Positions 1 through 63,736 of a DNA stretch of 64,000 nucleotides are shown here, piece after piece. Every line of letters starts with the position of its first letter. Within the stretch, counting starts at the first letter, position 1. The translations under genes and the position numbers were made by a program. The notes under the pieces are model-generated. The model ran no database searches and was not told where the DNA came from. It saw nothing but the letters and a program-made list of their open reading frames with translations. The stretch covers positions 290,099-354,098 of the IMG/VR virus record IMGVR_UViG_3300043418_000072. One strand, 5' to 3'.

Positions 1-314
1 CCCGGATACTTGGCAAGTATGTTATCCTGCGGTCCAGGTTTTTGCGTTATCGGTATTGGGTTGCAGAGAAAAAATACTTTACTAACATCAAAACTAGTTG
101 CCCGTGTGCCACTATTATTAGGCCATATTTCGTTGTCTTTCCACGCCGAAACATTTTGTATATTCCATTGCGTGGACTTTGTTTTGTGTACGTTGATTGT
201 TCCGTTTTCGAAGCAACACTTATATTGGCCGCTGAGTAGCAACAGGTACAAACAAAAGAATCCGCCACTACCTCCAAAATAACAAATAGTTACATCAGCT
301 GGCTTCTGCGTCAT
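1..314 (-). CDS. Hypothetical protein, 5' part (runs off window): MTQKPADVTICYFGGSGGFFCLYLLLLSGQYKCCFENG...
   Basis: Hand translation; ATG at 314 overlaps the upstream gene's TGA (ATGA); frame open to window edge, so absent from ORF track. Confidence 0.65.
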   Translation of the reverse strand, partial: MTQKPADVTICYFGGSGGFFCLYLLLLSGQYKCCFENGTINVHKTKSTQWNIQNVSAWKDNEIWPNNSGTRATSFDVSKVFFLCNPIPITQKPGPQDNILAKYP

Positions 315-1207
315 CGGGCAACCCCAGTTAACTCTGATACAATAGTTTGTACTGTCTTAATTGAACTAATGTAATCAATTGCTTTGCCCGCAAATACATG
401 CCCAGCAGTCGGACTCTTGATTCCCAGTTCTAGTCCCATTGTGTGATTACCATCTACGTCAGGCTCTGAAGAAAATACCAAAGCATTTTGATGAGCTTCG
501 CCAATATTCTTTACTTGATCAAATGACGATTCGATCATTTTCAGTTTGGTTTCAGTTGAAATAGATGATTCTTCTGATACTGCAAATATTGTTCCCAACC
601 CAACTGCACATGCTCCTGCATCCAAGCAGTCTTGTATATCTTGTGCCGACGTTACGCCGCCCGATGCGATAATATTTAGATTGCTGTGGGTCGATTTTAG
701 TTGCTTGATTCTATCCACTAGACTAATTGACACGTCTGCAACACGGGACGCAGCATCTGGTCCCTTTATATCAATTGCATCAATGTAATTAACTAAGTCC
801 CCAATAGGGCGTGTGCTCAATACTTTGTAGATTATCTTAATTTTATATTTTCTAAAAAGTTTAATGATATTTGTTAAACGAATGTTTGTTAAGTCTACAT
901 CATCAAACAATTCCAAGTAATTTGGATGGTATTTTAGAATAGCTTCAACCAGCGTTGTATCTTTTAATAAAAAATCCGATCGCAGTGCAAGAATAAAATC
1001 ACGAGACCCAGATTGCTCAGTGAATTCTTTCATCTCCGACACAATCTTTGTTACGTCAAGAGTCAATCGAGACTCAATATAATTGTGTACTACCAGGCTT
1101 GGCAGACAGCCTGCGTTGTGAACCGCGAGAGCCAACTTAACGTCGGACACTCTATTCATTGGCGCACAAATAATAGGATGTGTACAAGATAAAAAATTGT
1201 TTTGCAT
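311..1207 (-). CDS. Nitronate monooxygenase / 2-nitropropane dioxygenase-like FMN oxidoreductase
   Basis: PIICAPMN at N-terminus; IIASGGV...GACAVGLGTIF...ESS; HVFAGKA near C-terminus. Confidence 0.8.
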   Translation of the reverse strand: MQNNFLSCTHPIICAPMNRVSDVKLALAVHNAGCLPSLVVHNYIESRLTLDVTKIVSEMKEFTEQSGSRDFILALRSDFLLKDTTLVEAILKYHPNYLELFDDVDLTNIRLTNIIKLFRKYKIKIIYKVLSTRPIGDLVNYIDAIDIKGPDAASRVADVSISLVDRIKQLKSTHSNLNIIASGGVTSAQDIQDCLDAGACAVGLGTIFAVSEESSISTETKLKMIESSFDQVKNIGEAHQNALVFSSEPDVDGNHTMGLELGIKSPTAGHVFAGKAIDYISSIKTVQTIVSELTGVAR

Positions 1208-2818: not shown

Positions 2819-3045
2819 TAGGCTCCACCGTTAACGACAGCATTCGTCCTGGCTTTATTTTATGTCGGTTAATGCACGGTGGACACACATGCCGACGGGG
2901 TTACAGTTTCAATGATGGGATTCGAACCCACTAACTACCCGTGCGCTGCGGGTTGTGCTACGCTCAATATAAAACTGGTTTACTCTGTTTCGAACCAGAC
3001 CAACAGTATATCTTTGCACTATCTTTCCATGTCGTCTTCATTGTT

Positions 3046-3227: not shown

Positions 3228-3358
3228 TACCATATCAAAGTACGCTACGGAATCGAACCGCAGTCGTCAACCTTTCCCTCCAGGGCAATTGATACAATTA
3301 TAGCTTCCACAGGAGCGACCTGATTCACTATAATGCACTAGCGTACTTTGATATGGTA
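3228..3358 (-). ncRNA. Long-stem RNA with tRNA T-arm
   Basis: Perfect 20-bp inverted repeat taccatatcaaagtacgcta / tagcgtactttgatatggta; GCGG-TTCGATT-CCGT inside. Confidence 0.6.
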
Positions 3359-3608: not shown

Positions 3609-4280
3609 TTAATTCCAAAGTAAGTCAAAGTTGCCAGCTAACACTTTCTTAACGCTTGCAGTCTTGTCACTTACGTGATCTTTAACTGTATCGTCTTGAA
3701 AGCGGTATGTGCGAATTTTGTCTCCTCGCATCCCTGAACCAACTTGTTGCTTTCTGTTGCTTGCTAAGTTGTTATTATAACAGTCTTTTGTTATCTTGTC
3801 AACTCTTTCTCTAATAGTTTGCATGGCTTCTGCCAAACTATTTTCCCTACTGCGGCACTGTGCTGTTACTACTGTGCCGCTAGGTACGTGCGTAACACGG
3901 GCACTGTTTTGGTGCTTGTTACGGTGTTGTCCTCCTGCGCCTGTTCCGCTGTACCATTCAATCTTCAGATCTGAGTCAAGAATAGCAGTGGTCGGCACAC
4001 TTGGATCAACGACAGCGACAGTAACGGTACTAGTATGTACTCGTCCTTTTCGCTCAGTTGGTGGTACACGCTGTATTCGGTGTCCACCTGGCTCGTTGTA
4101 TAAGCCAGATAAATCAGCACCCTCGACTAAGATATGAACTTCGCCAAGATACTCATTTATCAGGCGGCTAGTTCAGCCCTTGCTGTGTGCAAATTTAATG
4201 TAGGCTTGCGCCAAGTCTTTTACAAATAGTTTACTGTCTTCGCCACCTTCTGCGGCACGGACTTCAATTACACGTTTCAT
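3609..4280 (-). CDS. prfA: RF1-like peptide chain release factor lacking domain 1, with in-frame UGA at codon 36
   Basis: Hand translation: IEVRAAEGG...SKG*TSR...EPGGHRIQRVPPTERKGRVHTS...GAGGQH...GSGMRGDKIRTY; PxT and GGQ motifs; TGA 4175-4173 is in frame with ORF 3609-3998. Confidence 0.9.
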
Positions 4281-5280: not shown

Positions 5281-5314
5281 TGGCAGAGGATAGTGGAATC
5301 GAACCACTAATGAC
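5281..5314 (-). pseudogene. tRNA 3' half fragment (T-arm + acceptor strand + GCCA)
   Basis: GTCATTAGTGGTTCGATTCCACTATCCTCTGCCA abutting the CCA of tRNA-Gln. Confidence 0.7.
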
Positions 5315-7049: not shown

Positions 7050-7123
7050 TGGATGCGGGTGCAAGATTTGAACTTGCGATGCTCCGAGCTTATGAGACTG
7101 GAGTGGTGGCCGCCCTACCCGCT
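7050..7123 (-). tRNA. tRNA-Met(CAT), atypical (unpaired 1:72, reduced D-arm)
   Basis: Loop CTCATAA, T-arm GCAAG-TTCAAAT-CTTGC, CCA. Confidence 0.7.
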
Positions 7124-7130
7124 ATAACCT

Positions 7131-7204
7131 TGGTGCCCCATAACAGAATCGAACTGCTATCCCCGGATTACAAAACCGGTGTTCTACCATTTAACTAATG
7201 GGGC
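7131..7204 (-). tRNA. tRNA-Thr(TGT)
   Basis: Loop TTTGTAA, CCA. Confidence 0.9.
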
Positions 7205-7413: not shown

Positions 7414-7618
7414 TTTGTAAGTAGTTGAGCCGCTGTTATCTCAACGCTTCACCCGAATTAACTAGTCCGGACGGGGGCAGTCTGCCACTAGGAATACTTG
7501 TCCAGTACAGCCTCCAAATGGCCCGCGCACGGTGGGATTCGAACCCATTAACCTTTTACTAAACAACACCTTCGAAGAATATTGAATAGCGTGACGTTCT
7601 CTTGCTGACACTTACAAA
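7414..7618 (-). ncRNA. About 205-nt structured RNA with terminal stem and internal T-arm
   Basis: TTTGTAAGT/ACTTACAAA ends; TGGG-TTCGAAT-CCCA; CTAGT/ACTAG and other helices. Confidence 0.55.
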
Positions 7619-7620
7619 AC

Positions 7621-7696
7621 TGGCGCCGTGGACGGGAATCGAACCCGCCTAGGTCTCATCGACAGTGAGGTGCCCTACCCAGAGAGCTACCACGGC
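7621..7696 (-). tRNA. tRNA-Asp(GTC)
   Basis: Loop CTGTCGA, G73, CCA. Confidence 0.92.
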
Positions 7697-8478: not shown

Positions 8479-8658
8479 TGCTGTTAAGGCTGATATCTAA
8501 TAAACCCTACTAGGAATCGAACCTAGGCCCCCGACGGATTATGCCGGTGTGCGTCCACTACACTATAGAGACTCCCTCCTCTTTCGCTCGGCAAAGCTAC
8601 ACGAATTGAGGTTAGATTTCAGACTGCTTTCAGATTGCCGTCATCAGCCTTAACAACA
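8479..8658 (-). ncRNA. Long-stem RNA enclosing a CCA-less tRNA-like cloverleaf
   Basis: 16-nt terminal inverted repeat; D-like GTG-TAGTGGAC-GCAC; CTAGG-TTCGATT-CCTAG. Confidence 0.55.
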
Positions 8659-8664
8659 CAAACT

Positions 8665-8734
8665 TGGCGCCCCTAACAGGAATCGAACCTGTCTACGTTC
8701 GGCTTCAAATCCGACTCGCAACTCAGTCCGGGGC
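8665..8734 (-). tRNA. Atypical 70-nt tRNA (vestigial D-arm, 8-nt anticodon loop ATTTGAAG; identity unclear)
   Basis: GCCCC/GGGGC acceptor, ACAGG-TTCGATT-CCTGT, G73, CCA. Confidence 0.55.
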
Positions 8735-8744
8735 ATAAACTTAT

Positions 8745-8889
8745 GTACATCAGCGGGATTCGAACCCGCACACATCACCCGAACATACCGCATTGTTAGC
8801 GGCTTACACATCCTAGGCCACTGGCCTTTACTGTCGATGTCCTACTTAGTGTTATGGGTAATGCTCTCCCAATTGATAGTATGACGCAC
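8745..8889 (-). ncRNA. tRNA-like RNA with about 70-nt branched insert replacing the anticodon loop
   Basis: Acceptor GTGCGTCA/TGATGTAC, D-arm, CATTACC/GGTGATG, GCGGG-TTCGAAT-CCCGC; no encoded CCA. Confidence 0.65.
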
Positions 8890-8963
8890 GAAATAGAAAC
8901 ACATTGCTAGTTTCGCCTTGAGCCGACTTTAAAATCAGATGCGGTTTAAGCAATGTGAAAACT

Positions 8964-9103
8964 TGGTGTAGTAATTGGGACTTGAACCCAACTAGTTATC
9001 TGTTTTTACAAACGGGTGATATCACTTCCCATCGCCATATGCCCCTCGGGTTTGCAATCCTGCTACGCACACAGTCAAATAACCTGTCAACCTAACTTAC
9101 CAC
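8964..9103 (-). ncRNA. Miniature tmRNA-like RNA (140 nt)
   Basis: GTGGTAA/TTACTAC with G3:U70, A73, CCA; stemless D-loop GTTAGGTTGACA; helix GGTTATTTG/CAGATAACT; TTGGG-TTCAAGT-CCCAA. Confidence 0.65.
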
Positions 9104-9110
9104 AAAAACT

Positions 9111-9185
9111 TGGAAGAGCTACGGGGAATCGAACCCCGCTTGCCTGGATGAAAACCAGATGTCCTAACCGATAGACGATAGCTCC
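9111..9185 (-). tRNA. tRNA-Glu(TTC)
   Basis: Loop TTTTCAT, CCA. Confidence 0.93.
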
Positions 9186-9464: not shown

Positions 9465-9493
9465 ATTATAGCACCCATTTCATTAAGTGTCAA
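9465..9493 (-). promoter_or_regulatory. Sigma70-type promoter
   Basis: TTGACA-N17-TATAAT. Confidence 0.85.
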
Positions 9494-9661: not shown

Positions 9662-9918
9662 TGGCTTCGTTAGCAGGACTCGAACCTGCGACCCGGGGCT
9701 TAAATCGCGTATGCTGGGTGCCCCGTGAGTTTCCAAAAGTTACCCTCACATCCCCTCAATGCCTTATCTCACTTTTCACACATTTCAACCTGTCCCGCAC
9801 TTCCCGGGCTCACAGTGTTTGGTTTTAAAGCCTACGCGATTGTTATCTACTTTGTGCTACTAGATGTATTATCTCATCTACTCAATGCTGCTCTACCTTC
9901 TCTCTACTCTATAACGAA
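9662..9918 (-). ncRNA. 257-nt tRNA-like RNA with large insert and probable pseudoknot
   Basis: Acceptor TTCGTTA/TAACGAA, G73, CCA; GCAGG-TTCGAGT-CCTGC; CGGGGC/GCCCCG; AATCGCGTA/TACGCGATT. Confidence 0.65.
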
Positions 9919-10519: not shown

Positions 10520-10598
10520 TGGCTCCGAGTGTGGGAATCGAACCCACCTAACCACTGATTAACAGTCAGGTCCCTGCACCTTGCTTGGATTTCTCGGA
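10520..10598 (-). tRNA. tRNA-Asn(GTT)
   Basis: Loop CTGTTAA, G73, CCA. Confidence 0.9.
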
Positions 10599-42193: not shown

Positions 42194-43816
42194 TTACTTG
42201 CTATAGAAGTTATCGTACAAGAATTGGTAGTGAGTAGGCAATGTCTCAATATGTGCCATTACTTCTTCTTTGTGCTCTAGCCACTTATCGTAGATTGTGG
42301 CTCGAAGTTCAGGCGACTCGTGACGTCTCACATCCTCATATCTTATATAATTTGGCTCCACGGGATTGTATCCCTGCCCTGCTGCAATATACAAAATCCC
42401 GCCCATGTTGTTATCAAATGTTCGAGTGCGGTGCATACGCATACCCAAGTCAGATGCAGATCGTACATCGTGTGCCAATCCAGACAAGTTAATAGTCCCG
42501 CCCATCGCTCGTGAATACGTTAAATCGCCTGTAACTTCTTTCCAGTACGGAGTATCGTTACGACAGCTTAGTGCATAGTGCTGACTAATAAAGTCTTTGA
42601 ATCCTAGAATCTGTTCTTGGAATCCATAGTTAAACAAATCAACATCGTAGTTACTAACAATGCCGTTACGCATTAACAGAGTATTGCATAATTTAACAAT
42701 GCCTTCGTGTGTTAGCATCAGTCCTGTACTTTCCAGTGGCTCAATGAAGCCATTAGCAAGACCGATGCCCACTACGTTTTTAACCCATGCACGCTCATGA
42801 ACACCGTGCTTGATCTTAATGTGTCGCACTTCGCATGATTCTGCTCGCTCTGCGTCCGGAAACATCATGCGATTGCTCTTTAGATGTTTGCGAAACTGCG
42901 CTTCTGCTTCTTCTTCAGTGGCATGTTTGCTGCTGTACACATAGCCTGTGCCGATGCGATTCCATAGCGGAATGTTCCATACCCATCCGCACTCAATAGC
43001 AGTGCATGATGTATAGTTTTCCATTTCTGCTTCTTTGTCAATATACGGAATGACTGTAGCAATCGCTCTGTCATTTAACAGTGTGTCATGGAAGCTAGTG
43101 AATGGCTCTTTGAGAGTTTGCTCTAATAGCAGACTCTTAAATCCAGTGCAATCAATAAACAAGTCTGCTTCTAGATATCCACTGTTCTCTGTCCCAATTT
43201 TTTCAATTGATCCATCTTCTCTCTGCACAACATCAGTTACTGTATCTAGTAAGTGCGTCATCCCACTCGGCAAGCACAGATTATCTCTAAGCCATGCGCC
43301 AAATAAGGTGGCATCCATGTGATATGCTGTGTCTTCACTAAAATTAAACCCACGAATTTTGTAATCCTCGTTTCGTGTCATTTTATTCTTATCCGTCATT
43401 AATATGCTGTCGTGATAAAACTCTGCAAAGTTGCTGGGATCAAGATTACCACGGTCGGCTGCTGCTAGGAACCATTCCATTGGGCCGCGAGGTTTATCTG
43501 TGAAATCTAAGATGCCAAAAGGATAATGAAACTTGTGCGGCTCCTCCTTTGGGTTTTCTCTAAAGTCAATGAACTTGATACTGGTCTTATATGTTGCATT
43601 ACATGCTGCCATCCAGTCTTCGTCCTTAATGCCAATTAATGCCAGATATTGATTAATATGTCCGATGGTACTTTCGCCCACACCAATGATAGGAATGTTA
43701 GGACTCTCAATGAGAGTTAGCTTAATGTTAGGTAGAAGCCTGGCTATTGCCGCCGCTGTCATCCATCCACTTGATCCACCGCCCACGATGGTAATTGATT
43801 TTACGTTATGGTGCAT
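42194..43816 (-). CDS. Tryptophan halogenase-family flavoprotein
   Basis: GGGSSGW, IGVGEST, FIDCTGF, GWVWNIP (WxWxIP), FIEPLESTG. Confidence 0.92.
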   Translation of the reverse strand: MHHNVKSITIVGGGSSGWMTAAAIARLLPNIKLTLIESPNIPIIGVGESTIGHINQYLALIGIKDEDWMAACNATYKTSIKFIDFRENPKEEPHKFHYPFGILDFTDKPRGPMEWFLAAADRGNLDPSNFAEFYHDSILMTDKNKMTRNEDYKIRGFNFSEDTAYHMDATLFGAWLRDNLCLPSGMTHLLDTVTDVVQREDGSIEKIGTENSGYLEADLFIDCTGFKSLLLEQTLKEPFTSFHDTLLNDRAIATVIPYIDKEAEMENYTSCTAIECGWVWNIPLWNRIGTGYVYSSKHATEEEAEAQFRKHLKSNRMMFPDAERAESCEVRHIKIKHGVHERAWVKNVVGIGLANGFIEPLESTGLMLTHEGIVKLCNTLLMRNGIVSNYDVDLFNYGFQEQILGFKDFISQHYALSCRNDTPYWKEVTGDLTYSRAMGGTINLSGLAHDVRSASDLGMRMHRTRTFDNNMGGILYIAAGQGYNPVEPNYIRYEDVRRHESPELRATIYDKWLEHKEEVMAHIETLPTHYQFLYDNFYSK

Positions 43817-61811: not shown

Positions 61812-62726
61812 TTAGGCGTTAGCAATTTGAACAGTAGTGTTCAATGTAGCTGCATCAAATGTCCAACGTACCATTGTACCGTCATCAAACTCATGCCCGG
61901 CTGTACCGTATTGTGTCAACAATGCGTTGTGGCTAGTTAGCTTGGTAACATAGTAAGTCTTGCCGCTGCTGTCTGTAGCAGTAATACTCATTTCTCCTAC
62001 TGCTGCTGGTGTAGCTGCAACTAAAGAACATACTGCTGTACCTTCGCTAGTTGTGACGCGATAGCGGTGGCTACCTTTTTGTGCGTTAATATCAGCAACT
62101 AAGCTGTTACTAGTTACGTAAGCGTAAGCAAGGATAGCATTTTCTTGGTTTGTTGCAGAACCAACATCACCACTGTCAGTTGTTAATGTAATAGTGTTTA
62201 CTGTAATACCACCACGGTTTGTGTACGACACTGTTGGTGCTGCTGTGTAGCCAGAACCTTTGTTAGTAACTGTCACTGATAATGCACCGTATGTTAATAC
62301 TGGAACTGCACCAGTACCTGTACCACCAGAAACGCCAGTTACCGCGCTCAATGCAGTAAACGAGCCTGCGGTTGTAACGCTGTTAACGGTAACAACTGCA
62401 CCACCAGCATCGGAAGTTACGTTAAGAACTGCTGAACCGCCTGCTGTAGTGACTGTTAAGTCAAATGTTTGTGCGTTACCATATCCTGTACCACCTGAAA
62501 TTGTGGCGCTAATTACTTTAGACACAATAACACCGGTTGCTGTTACGCCGCCTGGTAGTTGTGGTGCCGAAAATGTAATTGTTGGTAATGTAGTAGTATA
62601 CGAACCAGCAACCGATACTGCTGCACTTGCTAGGCCTTCACCGCCGATGCCATCATCTGCTGTGTAACCACCGTTGGTACCGACGTTACGGTTACCGAAA
62701 AATCTTTTTGCTAAAGGACGTCCCAT
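61812..62726 (-). CDS. Virion structural protein
   Basis: MGRPLAKRFFG; G/T/A-rich. Confidence 0.65.
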   Translation of the reverse strand: MGRPLAKRFFGNRNVGTNGGYTADDGIGGEGLASAAVSVAGSYTTTLPTITFSAPQLPGGVTATGVIVSKVISATISGGTGYGNAQTFDLTVTTAGGSAVLNVTSDAGGAVVTVNSVTTAGSFTALSAVTGVSGGTGTGAVPVLTYGALSVTVTNKGSGYTAAPTVSYTNRGGITVNTITLTTDSGDVGSATNQENAILAYAYVTSNSLVADINAQKGSHRYRVTTSEGTAVCSLVAATPAAVGEMSITATDSSGKTYYVTKLTSHNALLTQYGTAGHEFDDGTMVRWTFDAATLNTTVQIANA

Positions 62727-62810
62727 TTTGTTTTCTCCTTAAAATATGAAAATAGCGTTCTAGGCCTACGCTGATGGTACAGCATAAACTCTCAATTAAG
62801 AGCGAACATA

Positions 62811-63680
62811 CTATTTAGCGTTTTTCTTAAACAGTAGCTTAAAGTGACTCCAAAACGGATTGTTTAGAATGTGTATTCCATTAACAATCTTTCTATCAGG
62901 GTGTAGCAACTTAGTAACATTATGCATCTCCGTCCAGTGTACACCCGGTCTATGATGATGCTCTTGGTGATATCCTGCACCAAATCCAAAAATGTTATAC
63001 CAAGTACTGTAGATGCCGATCGAATCTTGTGTAGTATCACCTCTACGGTCTAATACGCCCCAATGCTCGCCGTAGCTGTTTGCATTGTTAACAAAGTACG
63101 CCATAAAATAGACTGGAATTAAAAATAGACCGTATACCGGGTTTATTAGAAATATACTCAACCAATAGATTCTAACTGCCCACTGTTCTCGTTTGAAACG
63201 AGCATACAATTCTTTAACTTTTAAAATATCAGGAACAACAGATACCCATGCCCACTTAGCATCACCGTACAGTGCCGAGCGCCAGCAGTATATCCAAAAA
63301 TTAGTAGGCTCATTAGTTTTACTAAATTTAAAAACTGATACTGGGTCTTTTGTTCGACCATTGACTGGCTTATCATTAATGTGCTTGTGATGCAGTAAAT
63401 GTCCGTGACGCCATAATTGGTGTGGTAATCCCGAGACTGCGCTTACAAATAATTCGTATATTCTATTCATTGTTGCAGAAACAAATACGCTGCAATGAGC
63501 GTGATGATGTAAGCAGGTGTTTTGTACGTTAACAATAAACCATATATGGAATACGCTAATAACAAACCATGCCCACACAGGAGGGTCGTAACATGCTACT
63601 AAGTAAGGAATAGATCCAACAAGTATTAAATTTATTAACAACAATGCGTCCAGCGGGGAATATCGAAAAATTTGTTTCAT
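62811..63680 (-). CDS. Fatty-acid desaturase-family membrane protein
   Basis: His boxes HHHAH, HGHLLHH, YHQEHHH; hydrophobic segments; start reassigned to MKQIF. Confidence 0.8.
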   Translation of the reverse strand: MKQIFRYSPLDALLLINLILVGSIPYLVACYDPPVWAWFVISVFHIWFIVNVQNTCLHHHAHCSVFVSATMNRIYELFVSAVSGLPHQLWRHGHLLHHKHINDKPVNGRTKDPVSVFKFSKTNEPTNFWIYCWRSALYGDAKWAWVSVVPDILKVKELYARFKREQWAVRIYWLSIFLINPVYGLFLIPVYFMAYFVNNANSYGEHWGVLDRRGDTTQDSIGIYSTWYNIFGFGAGYHQEHHHRPGVHWTEMHNVTKLLHPDRKIVNGIHILNNPFWSHFKLLFKKNAK

Positions 63681-63712
63681 GCTAGTATTTACTAAAAAAG
63701 TGGTGTAGACGT

Positions 63713-63736
63713 AAAAAAGCCCCAATTAAGGGGCTT
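63713..63736 (-). terminator. Intrinsic terminator after capsid gene
   Basis: AAGCCCC/GGGGCTT + T-run. Confidence 0.8.

What the first reader, a model, noticed from the sequence alone, without database searches (positions are those of the whole stretch)
8964..9103. 140-nt miniature tmRNA-like RNA
Seen: 7-bp acceptor with G3:U70, A73 and encoded CCA; stemless D-loop followed by GGTTGACAGG; a 9-bp helix in place of the anticodon stem; a 2-nt linker; T-loop TTCAAGT; and a roughly 70-nt two-hairpin insert. Established: these are the hallmarks of the tmRNA tRNA-like domain (alanylation, SmpB binding, GGATTCGAC-type D-loop), but tmRNAs are about 350 nt with pseudoknots and a degron tag. One frame GCA AAC...TAA (ANPRGIWRWEVISPVCKNR) exists but lacks a hydrophobic degron end. 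Inference: an SmpB decoy, or a rescue RNA that does not tag for degradation.
Basis: partly seen in the sequence, partly recalled or inferred. Interest (0 to 1): 0.85.

Follow-up and report, generated by a model that had tools for sequence, protein, structure and literature searches.

The report
Phage tmRNA-like alanine-acceptor mini RNA
A giant freshwater phage carries, inside its tRNA gene array, a conserved 140-base RNA shaped like the tRNA-like head of the ribosome-rescue RNA tmRNA but without its message part, so it probably acts on ribosome rescue rather than decoding codons; one other phage is already known to carry a simpler version.

Summary
On the minus strand, 9103..8964 encodes a 140-nt RNA. 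It has a 7-bp acceptor stem (G3:U70), A73, encoded CCA, a stemless D-loop, a 9-bp helix (P2) in place of the anticodon arm, a 2-nt linker, a T-arm and a 75-nt two-hairpin insert (P3, P4).

I found 20 distinct homologues in jumbo-phage and metagenome contigs, always inside tRNA arrays. Across them 95.9% of cells pair, against about 42% in slid controls, and 15 pairs show compensatory changes. The acceptor stem does not vary (one sequence has a C2·A71 mismatch).

ARAGORN and the Rfam tmRNA models do not call the element.

At least three relatives carry a complete two-piece tmRNA a few kb away, so this RNA is an addition to tmRNA, not a substitute.

The closest known thing is the "TLD-only" tmRNA of mycobacteriophage DS6A. 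A similar molecule inhibits tmRNA in E. coli, perhaps by titrating SmpB. This family is more diverged and adds a conserved extra domain.

Best reading: an alanine-accepting, SmpB-directed tmRNA mimic. Function is inferred, not shown. It is a new variant of a known kind.

The parts
8964..9103 (-). The whole 140-nt tRNA-like RNA gene (the 'A-family' member). RNA position p corresponds to window coordinate 9104-p.
   Evidence: Sequence read. Covariance model hit of 144 bits, E = 4e-34. 20 distinct homologues.
9097..9103 (-). Acceptor stem, 5' strand GUGGUAA (RNA positions 1-7). G3 pairs with U70.
   Evidence: Six of the seven pairs are invariant in 20/20 sequences, including G3:U70; pair 2:71 is U:A in 19/20 (one C·A mismatch).
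9085..9096 (-). Stemless D-loop GUUAGGUUGACA (positions 8-19), with conserved GG and RAC.
   Evidence: Alignment. It resembles the tmRNA_permuted consensus aAaUGGuUUCGAC and E. coli ssrA GGAUUCGAC.
9076..9084 (-). P2 helix, 5' strand (positions 20-28). It pairs with 8994-9002.
   Evidence: 7 of the 8 modelled pairs show compensatory changes.
9035..9074 (-). P3 domain (positions 30-69): an 8-bp helix CUGUGUGC/GCAUAUGG that encloses a purine-rich internal loop and a short inner stem, GG/CC.
   Evidence: 100% of cells paired in 20/20 sequences. Four pairs switch between wobble and Watson-Crick by a change on one side.
9012..9032 (-). P4 bulged hairpin (positions 72-92): outer stem AUGG/CCGU, inner stem GUG/CAC, loop AUAU.
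   Evidence: 3 of 4 outer pairs and 1 of 3 inner pairs show compensatory changes.
9022..9042 (-). Short frame GCA UAU GGC GAU GGG AAG UGA (positions 62-82). It is the only frame with a stop in the same column in all 20 sequences.
   Evidence: The peptide is not conserved (AYGDGK, AYSGSE, AYSDME and others) and the GCA lies inside helix P3. I keep it only as the basis of the minority 'mini-tag' reading.
9003..9011 (-). A-rich single-stranded linker UUGUAAAAA (positions 93-101).
   Evidence: Alignment. No conserved pairing with the P3 loop.
8994..9002 (-). P2 helix, 3' strand CAGAUAACU (positions 102-110), followed by the 2-nt linker AG (8992-8993).
8975..8991 (-). T-arm UUGGG-UUCAAGU-CCCAA (positions 113-129).
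   Evidence: 4 of 5 stem pairs covary. Weak tmRNA T-arm hit of 9.2 bits. Found again by my pattern scan.
8964..8974 (-). Acceptor stem 3' strand UUACUAC, discriminator A73 and encoded CCA (positions 130-140).
   Evidence: Invariant in 20/20 sequences.
9111..9185 (-). tRNA-Glu(UUC) located 7 nt upstream. It is probably co-transcribed with the element and cut away by tRNA-processing enzymes.
   Evidence: ARAGORN and Rfam. The spacer and the CCA+AGUUU context are shared with neighbouring tRNAs.
9465..9493 (-). Promoter-like site matching the sigma-70 consensus exactly: TTGACA, 17 nt, TATAAT (12/12, preceded by TG). It lies upstream of tRNA-Glu and the element.
   Evidence: This is a consensus match only, not evidence of function.

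Best explanation
The element is a tmRNA-mimicking, tRNA-like RNA without a message part. It is a larger and more diverged relative in kind of the 'TLD-only' tmRNA of mycobacteriophage DS6A.

Proposed mechanism, step by step:
1. It is transcribed as part of the phage tRNA array. (Inferred.)
2. Like its tRNA neighbours, it is released by RNase P at G1 and trimmed at the 3' end to the encoded CCA. (Inferred.)
3. Host alanyl-tRNA synthetase charges it through G3:U70 and A73. (Inferred from established identity rules.)
4. It has a stemless D-loop, a T-arm, and a helix leaving from where a long variable arm would be. It has no anticodon. It therefore presents the surface that SmpB binds on tmRNA. 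(Inferred from architecture.)
5. It then either competes with full-length tmRNA for SmpB and stalled ribosomes, or enters stalled ribosomes without supplying a degradation tag. Either way it re-tunes ribosome rescue during infection. (Inferred.)
6. The conserved P3-P4 domain, with nearly invariant purine-rich loops, is a second binding module whose partner is unknown.

What is shown: the fold, its conservation, its genomic context and its co-occurrence with tmRNA. Everything biochemical is inferred.
For: - Fold and conservation. 20 distinct homologues; 95.9% of cells paired against about 42% in slid controls; 15 pairs with compensatory change; an acceptor stem that does not vary apart from one C2·A71 mismatch, with G3:U70, A73 and CCA in 20/20.
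- tmRNA-type architecture. No D-stem; P2 directly replaces the anticodon arm, with a 2-nt linker to the T-stem. The D-loop GG...RAC resembles the tmRNA consensus. Reviews define the TLD in exactly these terms: reduced stemless D-loop, T-arm, G3:U70, A73, and H2 mimicking a long variable arm (PMC3968760, PMC3985003).
- Link to the precedent. My family model finds the DS6A TLD-only gene (NC_023744 28478-28560) as the best hit in that genome, 30.6 bits, E = 9e-6, aligned through acceptor stem, D-loop, P2 and T-arm.
- Published precedent. DS6A is listed as 'TLD only', and a similar molecule strongly inhibits tmRNA in E. coli, perhaps by titrating SmpB (PMC4131195; PMC11915505).
- No coding signal. 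No frame is conserved as a peptide.
- Context. The element always directly follows a tRNA, with tRNA-like flanks. The phages involved invest in rescue functions: complete permuted tmRNAs with ...ALAA tags in L026, L031 and L032, and a GGQ-only release-factor-domain protein at 3609-3998.
Against: - The Rfam tmRNA models and ARAGORN do not recognise the element, even at relaxed settings. RF00023 does align the DS6A TLD at 34.7 bits. Homology to tmRNA is therefore not demonstrated.
- The D-loop is 2-3 nt shorter than in tmRNA. The 3' junction is AG instead of the tmRNA GGAC, which takes part in the SmpB-binding core.
- Pair 2:71 is U:A, not the G:C found in tRNA-Ala and tmRNA. This may weaken charging.
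- No SmpB homologue was found in the window or in the fetched loci (using the E. coli SmpB query only).
- Co-occurrence with a complete phage tmRNA fits poorly with a pure inhibitor of trans-translation.
- The large conserved P3-P4 domain is not explained by a decoy role.
Confidence: 0.5

Rival explanations
1. It is a working minimal tmRNA. Hairpins replace the pseudoknots. After the nascent chain is transferred to Ala-RNA, the ribosome resumes on GCA (RNA position 62), adds a short non-degron tail (AYGDGK in the window) and terminates at the UGA/UAA in the top of hairpin P4. This would be rescue without marking the protein for proteolysis.
For: - Frame f0 (GCA UAY RGC GRY NNN RRG URA) has its stop codon in the same column in 20/20 sequences, and there are no indels between GCA and the stop.
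- GCA is invariant, and there is an invariant A four bases before it.
- The stop sits in a hairpin, as it does in tmRNA helix 5.
- Pseudoknots 2-4 are dispensable in vitro (PMC3985003), and natural tags of only 2 residues exist (PMC11915505).
Against: - The peptide is not conserved; all variation is explained by the RNA helices.
- GCA and the next two codons lie inside the 8-bp helix P3, which is paired in 100% of sequences, whereas resume codons are normally single-stranded.
- The conserved 'stop' is simply U-R-A at the top of a conserved A/U-rich hairpin.
- No pseudoknot 1 equivalent is supported.
- A loop of only 75 nt has to reach the mRNA channel.
Confidence: 0.1
2. It is an alanine-accepting (or merely tRNA-shaped) RNA that has nothing to do with SmpB. 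Examples: a decoy or sponge for a host factor that recognises tRNA acceptor/T-arm modules, such as a tRNA-targeting defence nuclease or a processing or modification enzyme; a dedicated alanyl donor for a non-ribosomal transferase; or a scaffold whose P3-P4 loops bind a phage or host protein. In this reading it resembles the still-unexplained stable RNAs C and D of the phage T4 tRNA cluster.
For: - There is no detectable sequence homology to tmRNA.
- The acceptor stem is fixed across all seven pairs, not just at G3:U70 (a single C2·A71 mismatch aside). This suggests a partner that reads the whole stem.
- The P3 loops are nearly invariant, which suggests a specific ligand.
- The same arrays hold several other non-canonical tRNA-like RNAs, some without the alanine identity pair.
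- T4, a relative in virion genes, has 139-nt and 119-nt stable RNAs at the end of its tRNA cluster. The 139-nt one has a T-arm and an acceptor-like stem.
Against: - The particular combination of G3:U70, A73, CCA, a stemless D-loop with GG...RAC, and a helix in place of the anticodon arm is the hallmark of the tmRNA TLD and of no other described RNA class (PMC3968760).
- The family model cross-hits the DS6A TLD.
- No candidate transferase or partner gene is consistently linked to it.
Confidence: 0.27
3. It is a decaying remnant, for example a tmRNA or tRNA pseudogene, or a structured spacer that only helps array processing, with no function of its own.
For: The array also contains degenerate-looking tRNA-like genes, for example an 'Ile-AAU' tRNA without CCA at 8501-8573. 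The element is patchily distributed among related phages: absent from L009, L011, L013-L015 and L022.
Against: 20 sequence variants differ at about 19% of columns yet keep every helix through compensatory changes. They also keep the acceptor stem (bar one mismatch), CCA and the loop motifs. Pseudogenes do not do this.
Confidence: 0.03

Closest known systems
'TLD-only' (CDS-less) tmRNA of mycobacteriophage DS6A (tmRNA Website; Mao et al. 2009; Hudson et al. 2014, PMC4131195; PMC11915505). I located it at NC_023744 28478-28560.
   Same: - Both are phage-encoded.
- Both have a 7-bp acceptor stem with G3:U70 and A73, a stemless D-loop with GG...GAC, a helix in place of the anticodon arm, a short linker and a T-arm.
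- Neither has a tag reading frame.
- My family model aligns to it end to end (30.6 bits).
   Different: - DS6A is 83 nt with only a small hairpin (about 20 nt) inside P2. This family is 135-142 nt with a conserved 75-nt two-hairpin domain.
- RF00023 aligns DS6A at 34.7 bits but does not align this element.
- DS6A has the tmRNA-type stem GGGGCCG/CGGCUCC and does not encode CCA (it reads CUA). This family has GUGGUAA/UUACUAC and encodes CCA.
- This family sits in tRNA arrays of jumbo T4-like phages and can coexist with a complete phage tmRNA.
Bacterial and phage tmRNA (Rfam RF00023, RF01850 beta_tmRNA, RF04321 tmRNA_permuted), including the permuted tmRNAs of related phages (L014, L026, L031, L032).
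   Same: The tRNA-like domain architecture and the alanine identity elements. It is encoded in the same tRNA arrays.
   Different: - One piece of 140 nt, against two-piece tmRNAs of 250-450 nt in these phages.
- No pseudoknots supported.
- No conserved tag ending in ALAA.
- Not detected by any tmRNA model.
Mitochondrial (jakobid, oomycete) and some plastid tmRNAs that lack a tag frame (Rfam RF02544; PMC11915505; PMC3985003).
   Same: Natural tmRNA derivatives reduced to a tRNA-like domain, with no obvious message part and with an unresolved mechanism.
   Different: Those are products of organelle genome reduction and are mostly permuted. They have no extra conserved domain. There was no Rfam hit to RF02544 here.
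Phage T4 stable RNAs C and D (species 1 and 2 RNAs; NC_000866 70908-71046 and 71053-71171).
   Same: Stable RNAs of about 140 and 120 nt, encoded at the end of a T4-type phage tRNA cluster and processed with the tRNAs. rnaC carries a T-arm and an acceptor-like stem. Their function is unknown.
   Different: No sequence or model-level homology beyond the T-arm (18.7 bits). There is no G3:U70 (rnaC has G4:U69) and no encoded CCA.

Membership tests
tmRNA (trans-translation RNA) | Acceptor stem with G3:U70, discriminator A73 and a 3' CCA (alanine identity). | tested here: met
   present in 20/20 sequences, with CCA encoded.
tmRNA (trans-translation RNA) | tRNA-like domain with a reduced, stemless D-loop, a T-arm, and a long helix (H2/P2) in place of the anticodon arm. 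| tested here: met
   T-arm and P2 covary, and no D-stem is possible. The D-loop is 2-3 nt shorter than the consensus seen.
tmRNA (trans-translation RNA) | At least one pseudoknot (PK1) between H2 and the tag frame. | tested here: not met
   The nested structure explains the covariation. The P3-loop to linker pairing that is possible in the window is lost in other clades and in the recombinant L031.
tmRNA (trans-translation RNA) | A message-like domain: a conserved tag frame with a resume codon, a stop and a C-terminal degron. | tested here: not met
Frame f0 has a conserved stop but a variable 6-residue peptide ending in K, R or E.
tmRNA (trans-translation RNA) | Recognition by curated tmRNA models (Rfam RF00023, RF01849, RF01850, RF04321, RF02544; ARAGORN). 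| tested here: not met
   only a 9.2-bit T-arm match. The same models find true tmRNAs in relatives at 97-140 bits.
tmRNA (trans-translation RNA) | Charged by AlaRS; binds SmpB and EF-Tu; enters stalled ribosomes. | not testable with these tools
   This needs biochemistry. No SmpB gene was found in the window or in the loci.
TLD-only / CDS-less tmRNA variants (phage DS6A type) | A tmRNA-type tRNA-like domain with no tag frame. | tested here: met
   The cross-hit of my family model to the DS6A gene scores 30.6 bits, E = 9e-6.
TLD-only / CDS-less tmRNA variants (phage DS6A type) | 'Little more than the TLD' (about 65-85 nt). | tested here: not met
   It is 140 nt, with a conserved 75-nt P3-P4 domain. 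DS6A is 83 nt.
TLD-only / CDS-less tmRNA variants (phage DS6A type) | Detectable descent from tmRNA (aligned by RF00023 across acceptor stem, D-loop, H2 and T-arm). | tested here: not met
   DS6A scores 34.7 bits with a global alignment. The window element has no such alignment.
TLD-only / CDS-less tmRNA variants (phage DS6A type) | Inhibits tmRNA function, probably by titrating SmpB. | not testable with these tools
   Reported for a similar molecule in E. coli (PMC4131195, citing Mao et al. 2009). Not tested for this family.
Canonical or intron-containing tRNA-Ala | Cloverleaf with a D-stem and an anticodon arm carrying an Ala anticodon. An intron, if present, lies in the anticodon loop. | tested here: not met
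   ARAGORN calls nothing with introns of up to 120 nt allowed and thresholds relaxed. RF00005 gives no hit. There is no D-stem, and the insert is a conserved structured domain, not an anticodon arm.
Phage T4 rnaC / rnaD stable RNAs | Sequence or structure homology to T4 species 1 and 2 RNAs. | tested here: not met
   The family model gives 18.7 bits on rnaC, through the T-arm and acceptor stem only.

The most novel reading that the evidence does not exclude
The family is a naturally minimised, fully functional tmRNA of about 140 nt. Two hairpins replace all the pseudoknots. A 6-codon frame (GCA UAY ... URA) adds a short tail that is not a degron and supplies a stop codon. The phage would then rescue ribosomes stalled on its own damaged or cleaved messages without condemning the proteins to proteolysis. 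It could work alongside the phage's ordinary degron-tagging tmRNA and the GGQ-only release-factor-like protein.
Probability: 0.1. Interest if true: 0.9.

Novelty: new variant of a known kind. Interest (0 to 1): 0.6.

Why it matters
Trans-translation is the main ribosome-rescue pathway of bacteria and an antibiotic target. How phages manipulate it is almost unstudied. Until now the only phage 'TLD-only' tmRNA was a single 83-nt gene in mycobacteriophage DS6A.

This finding shows that a second, independent-looking and well-conserved family exists in freshwater jumbo phages. It carries an extra conserved domain and can sit next to a complete phage tmRNA. That makes several questions testable:

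- Can a tRNA-like domain without a message enter stalled ribosomes?
- What happens to the peptide afterwards?
- Do phages use such RNAs to block, bypass or re-route host quality control?

The finding also shows that standard tRNA and tmRNA finders miss a whole layer of CCA-ended tRNA-like RNAs in phage tRNA arrays. At least eight go uncalled in this window alone. This recalls the T4 stable RNAs C and D, which are still unexplained.

Tried and rejected
1. **Intron-containing tRNA.** ARAGORN with introns of up to 120 nt allowed and relaxed thresholds calls nothing. The insert is a conserved two-hairpin domain with no anticodon arm.
Not conserved. L033 and L054 stop early, and other clades have a 1-nt indel near the end. 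Frame f1 (GCG AUG...) lacks a stop in 5 of 20 sequences.
3. **Pseudoknot between the P3 loop and the A-rich linker.** Complementary only in the window clade, and broken in L031, which combines the window-type loop with another linker. A scan of all column pairs gave no coherent extra helix.
4. **Homology of the insert to tmRNA PK1.** A 9-mer (CCGAGGGGC), a 12-of-13 match (ACCCAAGGGGCAU against ACCCAAGGUGCAU) and GUAAAAA are shared with E. coli ssrA. AGUAGGAAC is shared with the L026 tmRNA. BLAST E-values are about 0.85, so I treat these as chance or at most a lead.
5. **SmpB gene nearby.** tblastn and phmmer with E. coli SmpB against the window and the loci found nothing. Sensitivity is limited.
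6. **Close relatives in cultured phages.** None. Only the neighbouring tRNA-Glu matched in 50,697 records.
7. **Copies in bacterial genomes.** Two pattern matches among the representative genomes, neither a family member.
8. **First degenerate pattern (GGTTGAC...GGGTTCAAGTCCC).** It found only chance pairings of a promoter with a tRNA.
The roughly 320 tmRNA-centred loci they fetched contain no family member.
10. **Linkage to the GGQ protein.** Homologues occur only in loci that carry the element, but in just 4 of about 12 of them. Not significant.
11. **Single-sequence thermodynamic folding.** It does not give the tRNA-like fold and was not used as evidence.

Full report
**1. What is there**

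The window is part of a T4-like jumbo myovirus. It encodes a T4-type large terminase, a tail sheath and a gp15-like sheath stabiliser. It is 100% identical over the region to IMG/VR contig 3300043418_000072, which is 354 kb long.

Between 1223 and 12566 the minus strand carries 37 tRNA genes found by ARAGORN. All of them have an encoded CCA.

The finding lies in a 537-nt stretch of this array that neither ARAGORN nor Rfam annotates.

- acceptor stem GUGGUAA/UUACUAC with G3:U70;
- A73 and an encoded CCA;
- a 12-nt D-region with no possible stem (GUUAGGUUGACA);
- a 9-bp helix, P2;
- a 2-nt AG linker;
- T-arm UUGGG-UUCAAGU-CCCAA;
- a 75-nt insert.

The gene starts 7 nt after the CCA of tRNA-Glu. 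It is followed by the same AGUUU-type spacer as its neighbours. A site matching the sigma-70 promoter consensus perfectly lies upstream at 9493..9465. That is a consensus match only.

**2. Is it more than chance?**

Exact and degenerate pattern scans were run on IMG/VR and on the metagenome collection. I also fetched loci around a neighbouring protein. Together these gave 31 loci holding 20 distinct sequences of 135-142 nt. Mean column identity is 81%.

A covariance model built on them scores members at 120-154 bits. The next best hits are ordinary tRNAs at 36 bits or less, so the family is sharply bounded.

On the model-fitted alignment, 95.9% of cells in the proposed helices form pairs. When the partners are slid by 1-3 columns, only 36-46% do. 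Fifteen pairs show changes on both sides, against 1-3 pairs in the slid controls.

Helix by helix:

| Helix | Result |
|---|---|
| T-stem | 4 of 5 pairs covary |
| P2 | 7 of 8 pairs covary |
| P4 outer stem | 3 of 4 pairs covary |
| P3 (8 bp) | paired in every sequence; varies only between wobble and Watson-Crick |
| Acceptor stem | 6 of 7 pairs invariant; pair 2:71 is U:A in 19/20, with one C2·A71 mismatch in L050 |

RNAalifold recovers all these helices independently. Thermodynamic folding of single sequences does not. Its minimum-free-energy folds are 12-20 kcal/mol lower and differ between members. The evidence is therefore comparative.

**3. What it is not**

- *Not a tRNA, with or without an intron.* RF00005 and ARAGORN, even with introns allowed and thresholds relaxed, call nothing.
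- *Not a recognisable tmRNA.* Only the T-arm scores against RF00023, at 9.2 bits. The same models find complete permuted, betaproteobacterial-type tmRNAs in related phages at 97-140 bits, with tags such as ANDSQFALAA.
- *Not supported as having a pseudoknot*.
- *Not accompanied by an SmpB gene nearby,* using the E. coli query only.

One short frame, GCA UAY RGC GRY NNN RRG URA, does end at the same column in all 20 sequences. However, its peptide is not conserved, its variation follows the helices, and its first three codons lie inside P3.

**4. What it resembles**

The tmRNA tRNA-like domain (TLD) is defined by four things: G3:U70 with A73 and CCA; a reduced stemless D-loop that contacts the T-loop and is held by SmpB; a T-arm; and helix H2 leaving where a long variable arm would (PMC3968760, PMC3985003). 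The family has all four.

Its D-loop consensus is GUUUGGUUGACA. The Rfam tmRNA_permuted consensus is aAaUGGuUUCGAC and E. coli has GGAUUCGAC. The family's loop is 2-3 nt shorter, and its 3' junction reads AG where tmRNA has GGAC.

The literature holds a direct precedent. Mycobacteriophage DS6A is listed as having a 'TLD only' tmRNA. A similar molecule, chargeable or not, strongly inhibits tmRNA in E. coli, perhaps by titrating SmpB (PMC4131195; PMC11915505, both citing Mao et al. 2009).

I located that gene at NC_023744 28478-28560. It is 83 nt long. My family model finds it as the best hit in the 60.6-kb genome: 30.6 bits, E = 9e-6, aligned through acceptor stem, D-loop, P2 and T-arm.

As a calibration, RF00023 aligns the DS6A gene globally at 34.7 bits but produces no such alignment for the window element. 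ARAGORN misses both. The window family therefore shares the DS6A architecture but is more diverged from tmRNA. It also carries 75 nt of conserved extra structure.

**5. Context that bears on function**

- *Coexistence with tmRNA.* The family coexists with a complete phage tmRNA within 2-8 kb in L026, L031 and L032. It is an addition, not a replacement. About 320 other tmRNA-centred viral loci hold no family member, so the family is confined to a small clade.
- *Patchy distribution.* It is absent from close relatives (L009, against L010 which has it) and from L011, L013-L015 and L022. L031 is a recombinant of two subtypes. HNH endonuclease genes lie 120-400 nt away in L033, L054, L029 and L026. 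This suggests spread as a cassette.
- *A GGQ-only protein.* The window encodes a 129-aa protein made of a release-factor GGQ domain only (motif GAGGQ) at 3609-3998. Homologues occur only in loci that carry the element, but in just 4 of about 12 of them.
- *Not seen outside metagenomic phage contigs.* No member was found in 50,697 cultured-phage records or in the representative bacterial genomes.

**6. Most likely mechanism**

Shown: a conserved, structured, tRNA-array-embedded RNA with alanine identity elements and tmRNA-TLD architecture, no conserved coding frame, and coexistence with tmRNA.

Inferred: processing by RNase P and 3' trimming to CCA; charging by AlaRS; binding of SmpB and EF-Tu; and, as a result, either competition with tmRNA or entry into stalled ribosomes without tagging. 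The P3-P4 domain would serve as a second binding module.

| Reading | Probability |
|---|---|
| SmpB-directed tmRNA mimic | about 0.5 |
| tRNA-shaped RNA with a different partner (cf. T4 RNAs C and D) | about 0.27 |
| True mini-tmRNA with a short non-degron tag | about 0.1 |
| Functionless remnant | about 0.03 |

**7. Novelty and verdict**

The kind is already known: a phage-encoded, message-less tmRNA mimic. This is still a new, well-supported family with a distinct extra domain, a different genomic setting and coexistence with tmRNA. None of the standard tools detects it.

I class it as a new variant of a known kind, with interest 0.6.

Noticed in passing
window 8745-8842 (- strand): A second uncalled tRNA-like RNA ('B'). 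It has a T-arm GCGGG-UUCGAAU-CCCGC, an acceptor-like stem ACAUC/GAUGU and no CCA (it ends ...GUACAUAAGUUU). It is conserved in L008 at 87% identity. The T-stem covaries (GUAGG/CCUAC). An inner hairpin also covaries, but its loop is not conserved, so it is not an anticodon.
   Followed up: partly
window 8665-8734 (- strand): A third uncalled tRNA-like gene ('C') of 70 nt. It has GCCCC.../...GGGGC, G73, an encoded CCA and T-arm ACAGG-UUCGAUU-CCUGU. In place of a normal anticodon arm it has a 4-bp stem with an 8-nt loop, AUUUGAAG. My family model scores it at 21 bits. It could be an odd decoder or another mimic.
   Followed up: no
window 8900-8957 (- strand): A 58-nt hairpin closed by a 9-bp stem (CACAUUGCU...AGCAAUGUG), directly after the element. 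About 85% identical copies sit elsewhere in the tRNA arrays of L010-L012.
   Followed up: no
window 10520-10598, 9673-9689, 5292-5308, 3246-3262, 2915-2931 (- strand): Five more perfect 5-bp T-arm modules lie outside any ARAGORN call. One is a 79-nt tRNA-Asn(GUU)-like gene with an aberrant D-region and an encoded CCA. Standard finders miss at least eight tRNA-like genes in this array.
   Followed up: no
window 8501-8573 (- strand): The gene ARAGORN calls 'tRNA-Ile(AAU)' scores only 37.6 bits, has C at position 37 and lacks the encoded CCA that every other tRNA here has. It is conserved in L008.
   Followed up: no
window 3609-3998 (- strand): A 129-aa protein made only of the release-factor GGQ domain (GAGGQHRNK). 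It matches RF1 residues 210-334 and, more weakly, PrfH. It is a candidate codon-independent peptidyl-tRNA hydrolase sitting inside the tRNA array.
   Followed up: partly
L008:~7518-7669 and L026:~7095-7175: Another conserved CCA-ended RNA, of about 150 nt in L008, lies next to the family member. It shares the motif GGGUCU.ACAUGGUGU...GAUUGAUCAC. The L008 copy also has G3:U70, A73 and CCA. It is not present in the window.
   Followed up: no
L011:7771-7848, L013:4186-4273, L022:1416-1450: In relatives that lack the family, the slot after tRNA-Glu holds other non-canonical CCA-ended RNAs. L013 has a roughly 90-nt one with acceptor stem GGACGAA/UUCGUCC and two hairpins. L011/L012 have a roughly 80-nt one. 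L022 has a roughly 35-nt minihelix-like one.
   Followed up: no
L014, L022, L023; L009-L013, L022: Related phages carry tRNAs with a CUA anticodon, that is, amber suppressors, which ARAGORN calls 'Pyl'. They also carry 92-95-nt 'tRNA-Ile(UAU)' genes. The long open reading frames in the window (up to 1668 aa) give no sign of stop-codon recoding here.
   Followed up: no
L011, L022, L026, L032, L039: GOLLD RNAs (193-212 bits) sit in the same tRNA arrays, some of them enclosing a tRNA. None is present in the window.
   Followed up: no
window 62724-62803 (- strand): A freshwater-2 RNA motif (RF02980, 55.9 bits) lies between a 304-aa ORF of unknown function (61812-62726) and a fatty-acid desaturase gene (62811-63725).
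   Followed up: no
window 42194-43816, 1303-2511, 311-1207 (- strand): Unusual cargo genes: a tryptophan-halogenase-family protein (E = 3e-109), a twitch-domain radical SAM protein (E = 1e-81) and an FMN TIM-barrel protein (NMO/Dus-like). The last two flank the tRNA array.
   Followed up: no
IMG/VR at large (loci L064-L348): Betaproteobacterial-type permuted tmRNA sequences are very common in viral contigs, many of them 260-364 kb.
   Followed up: no
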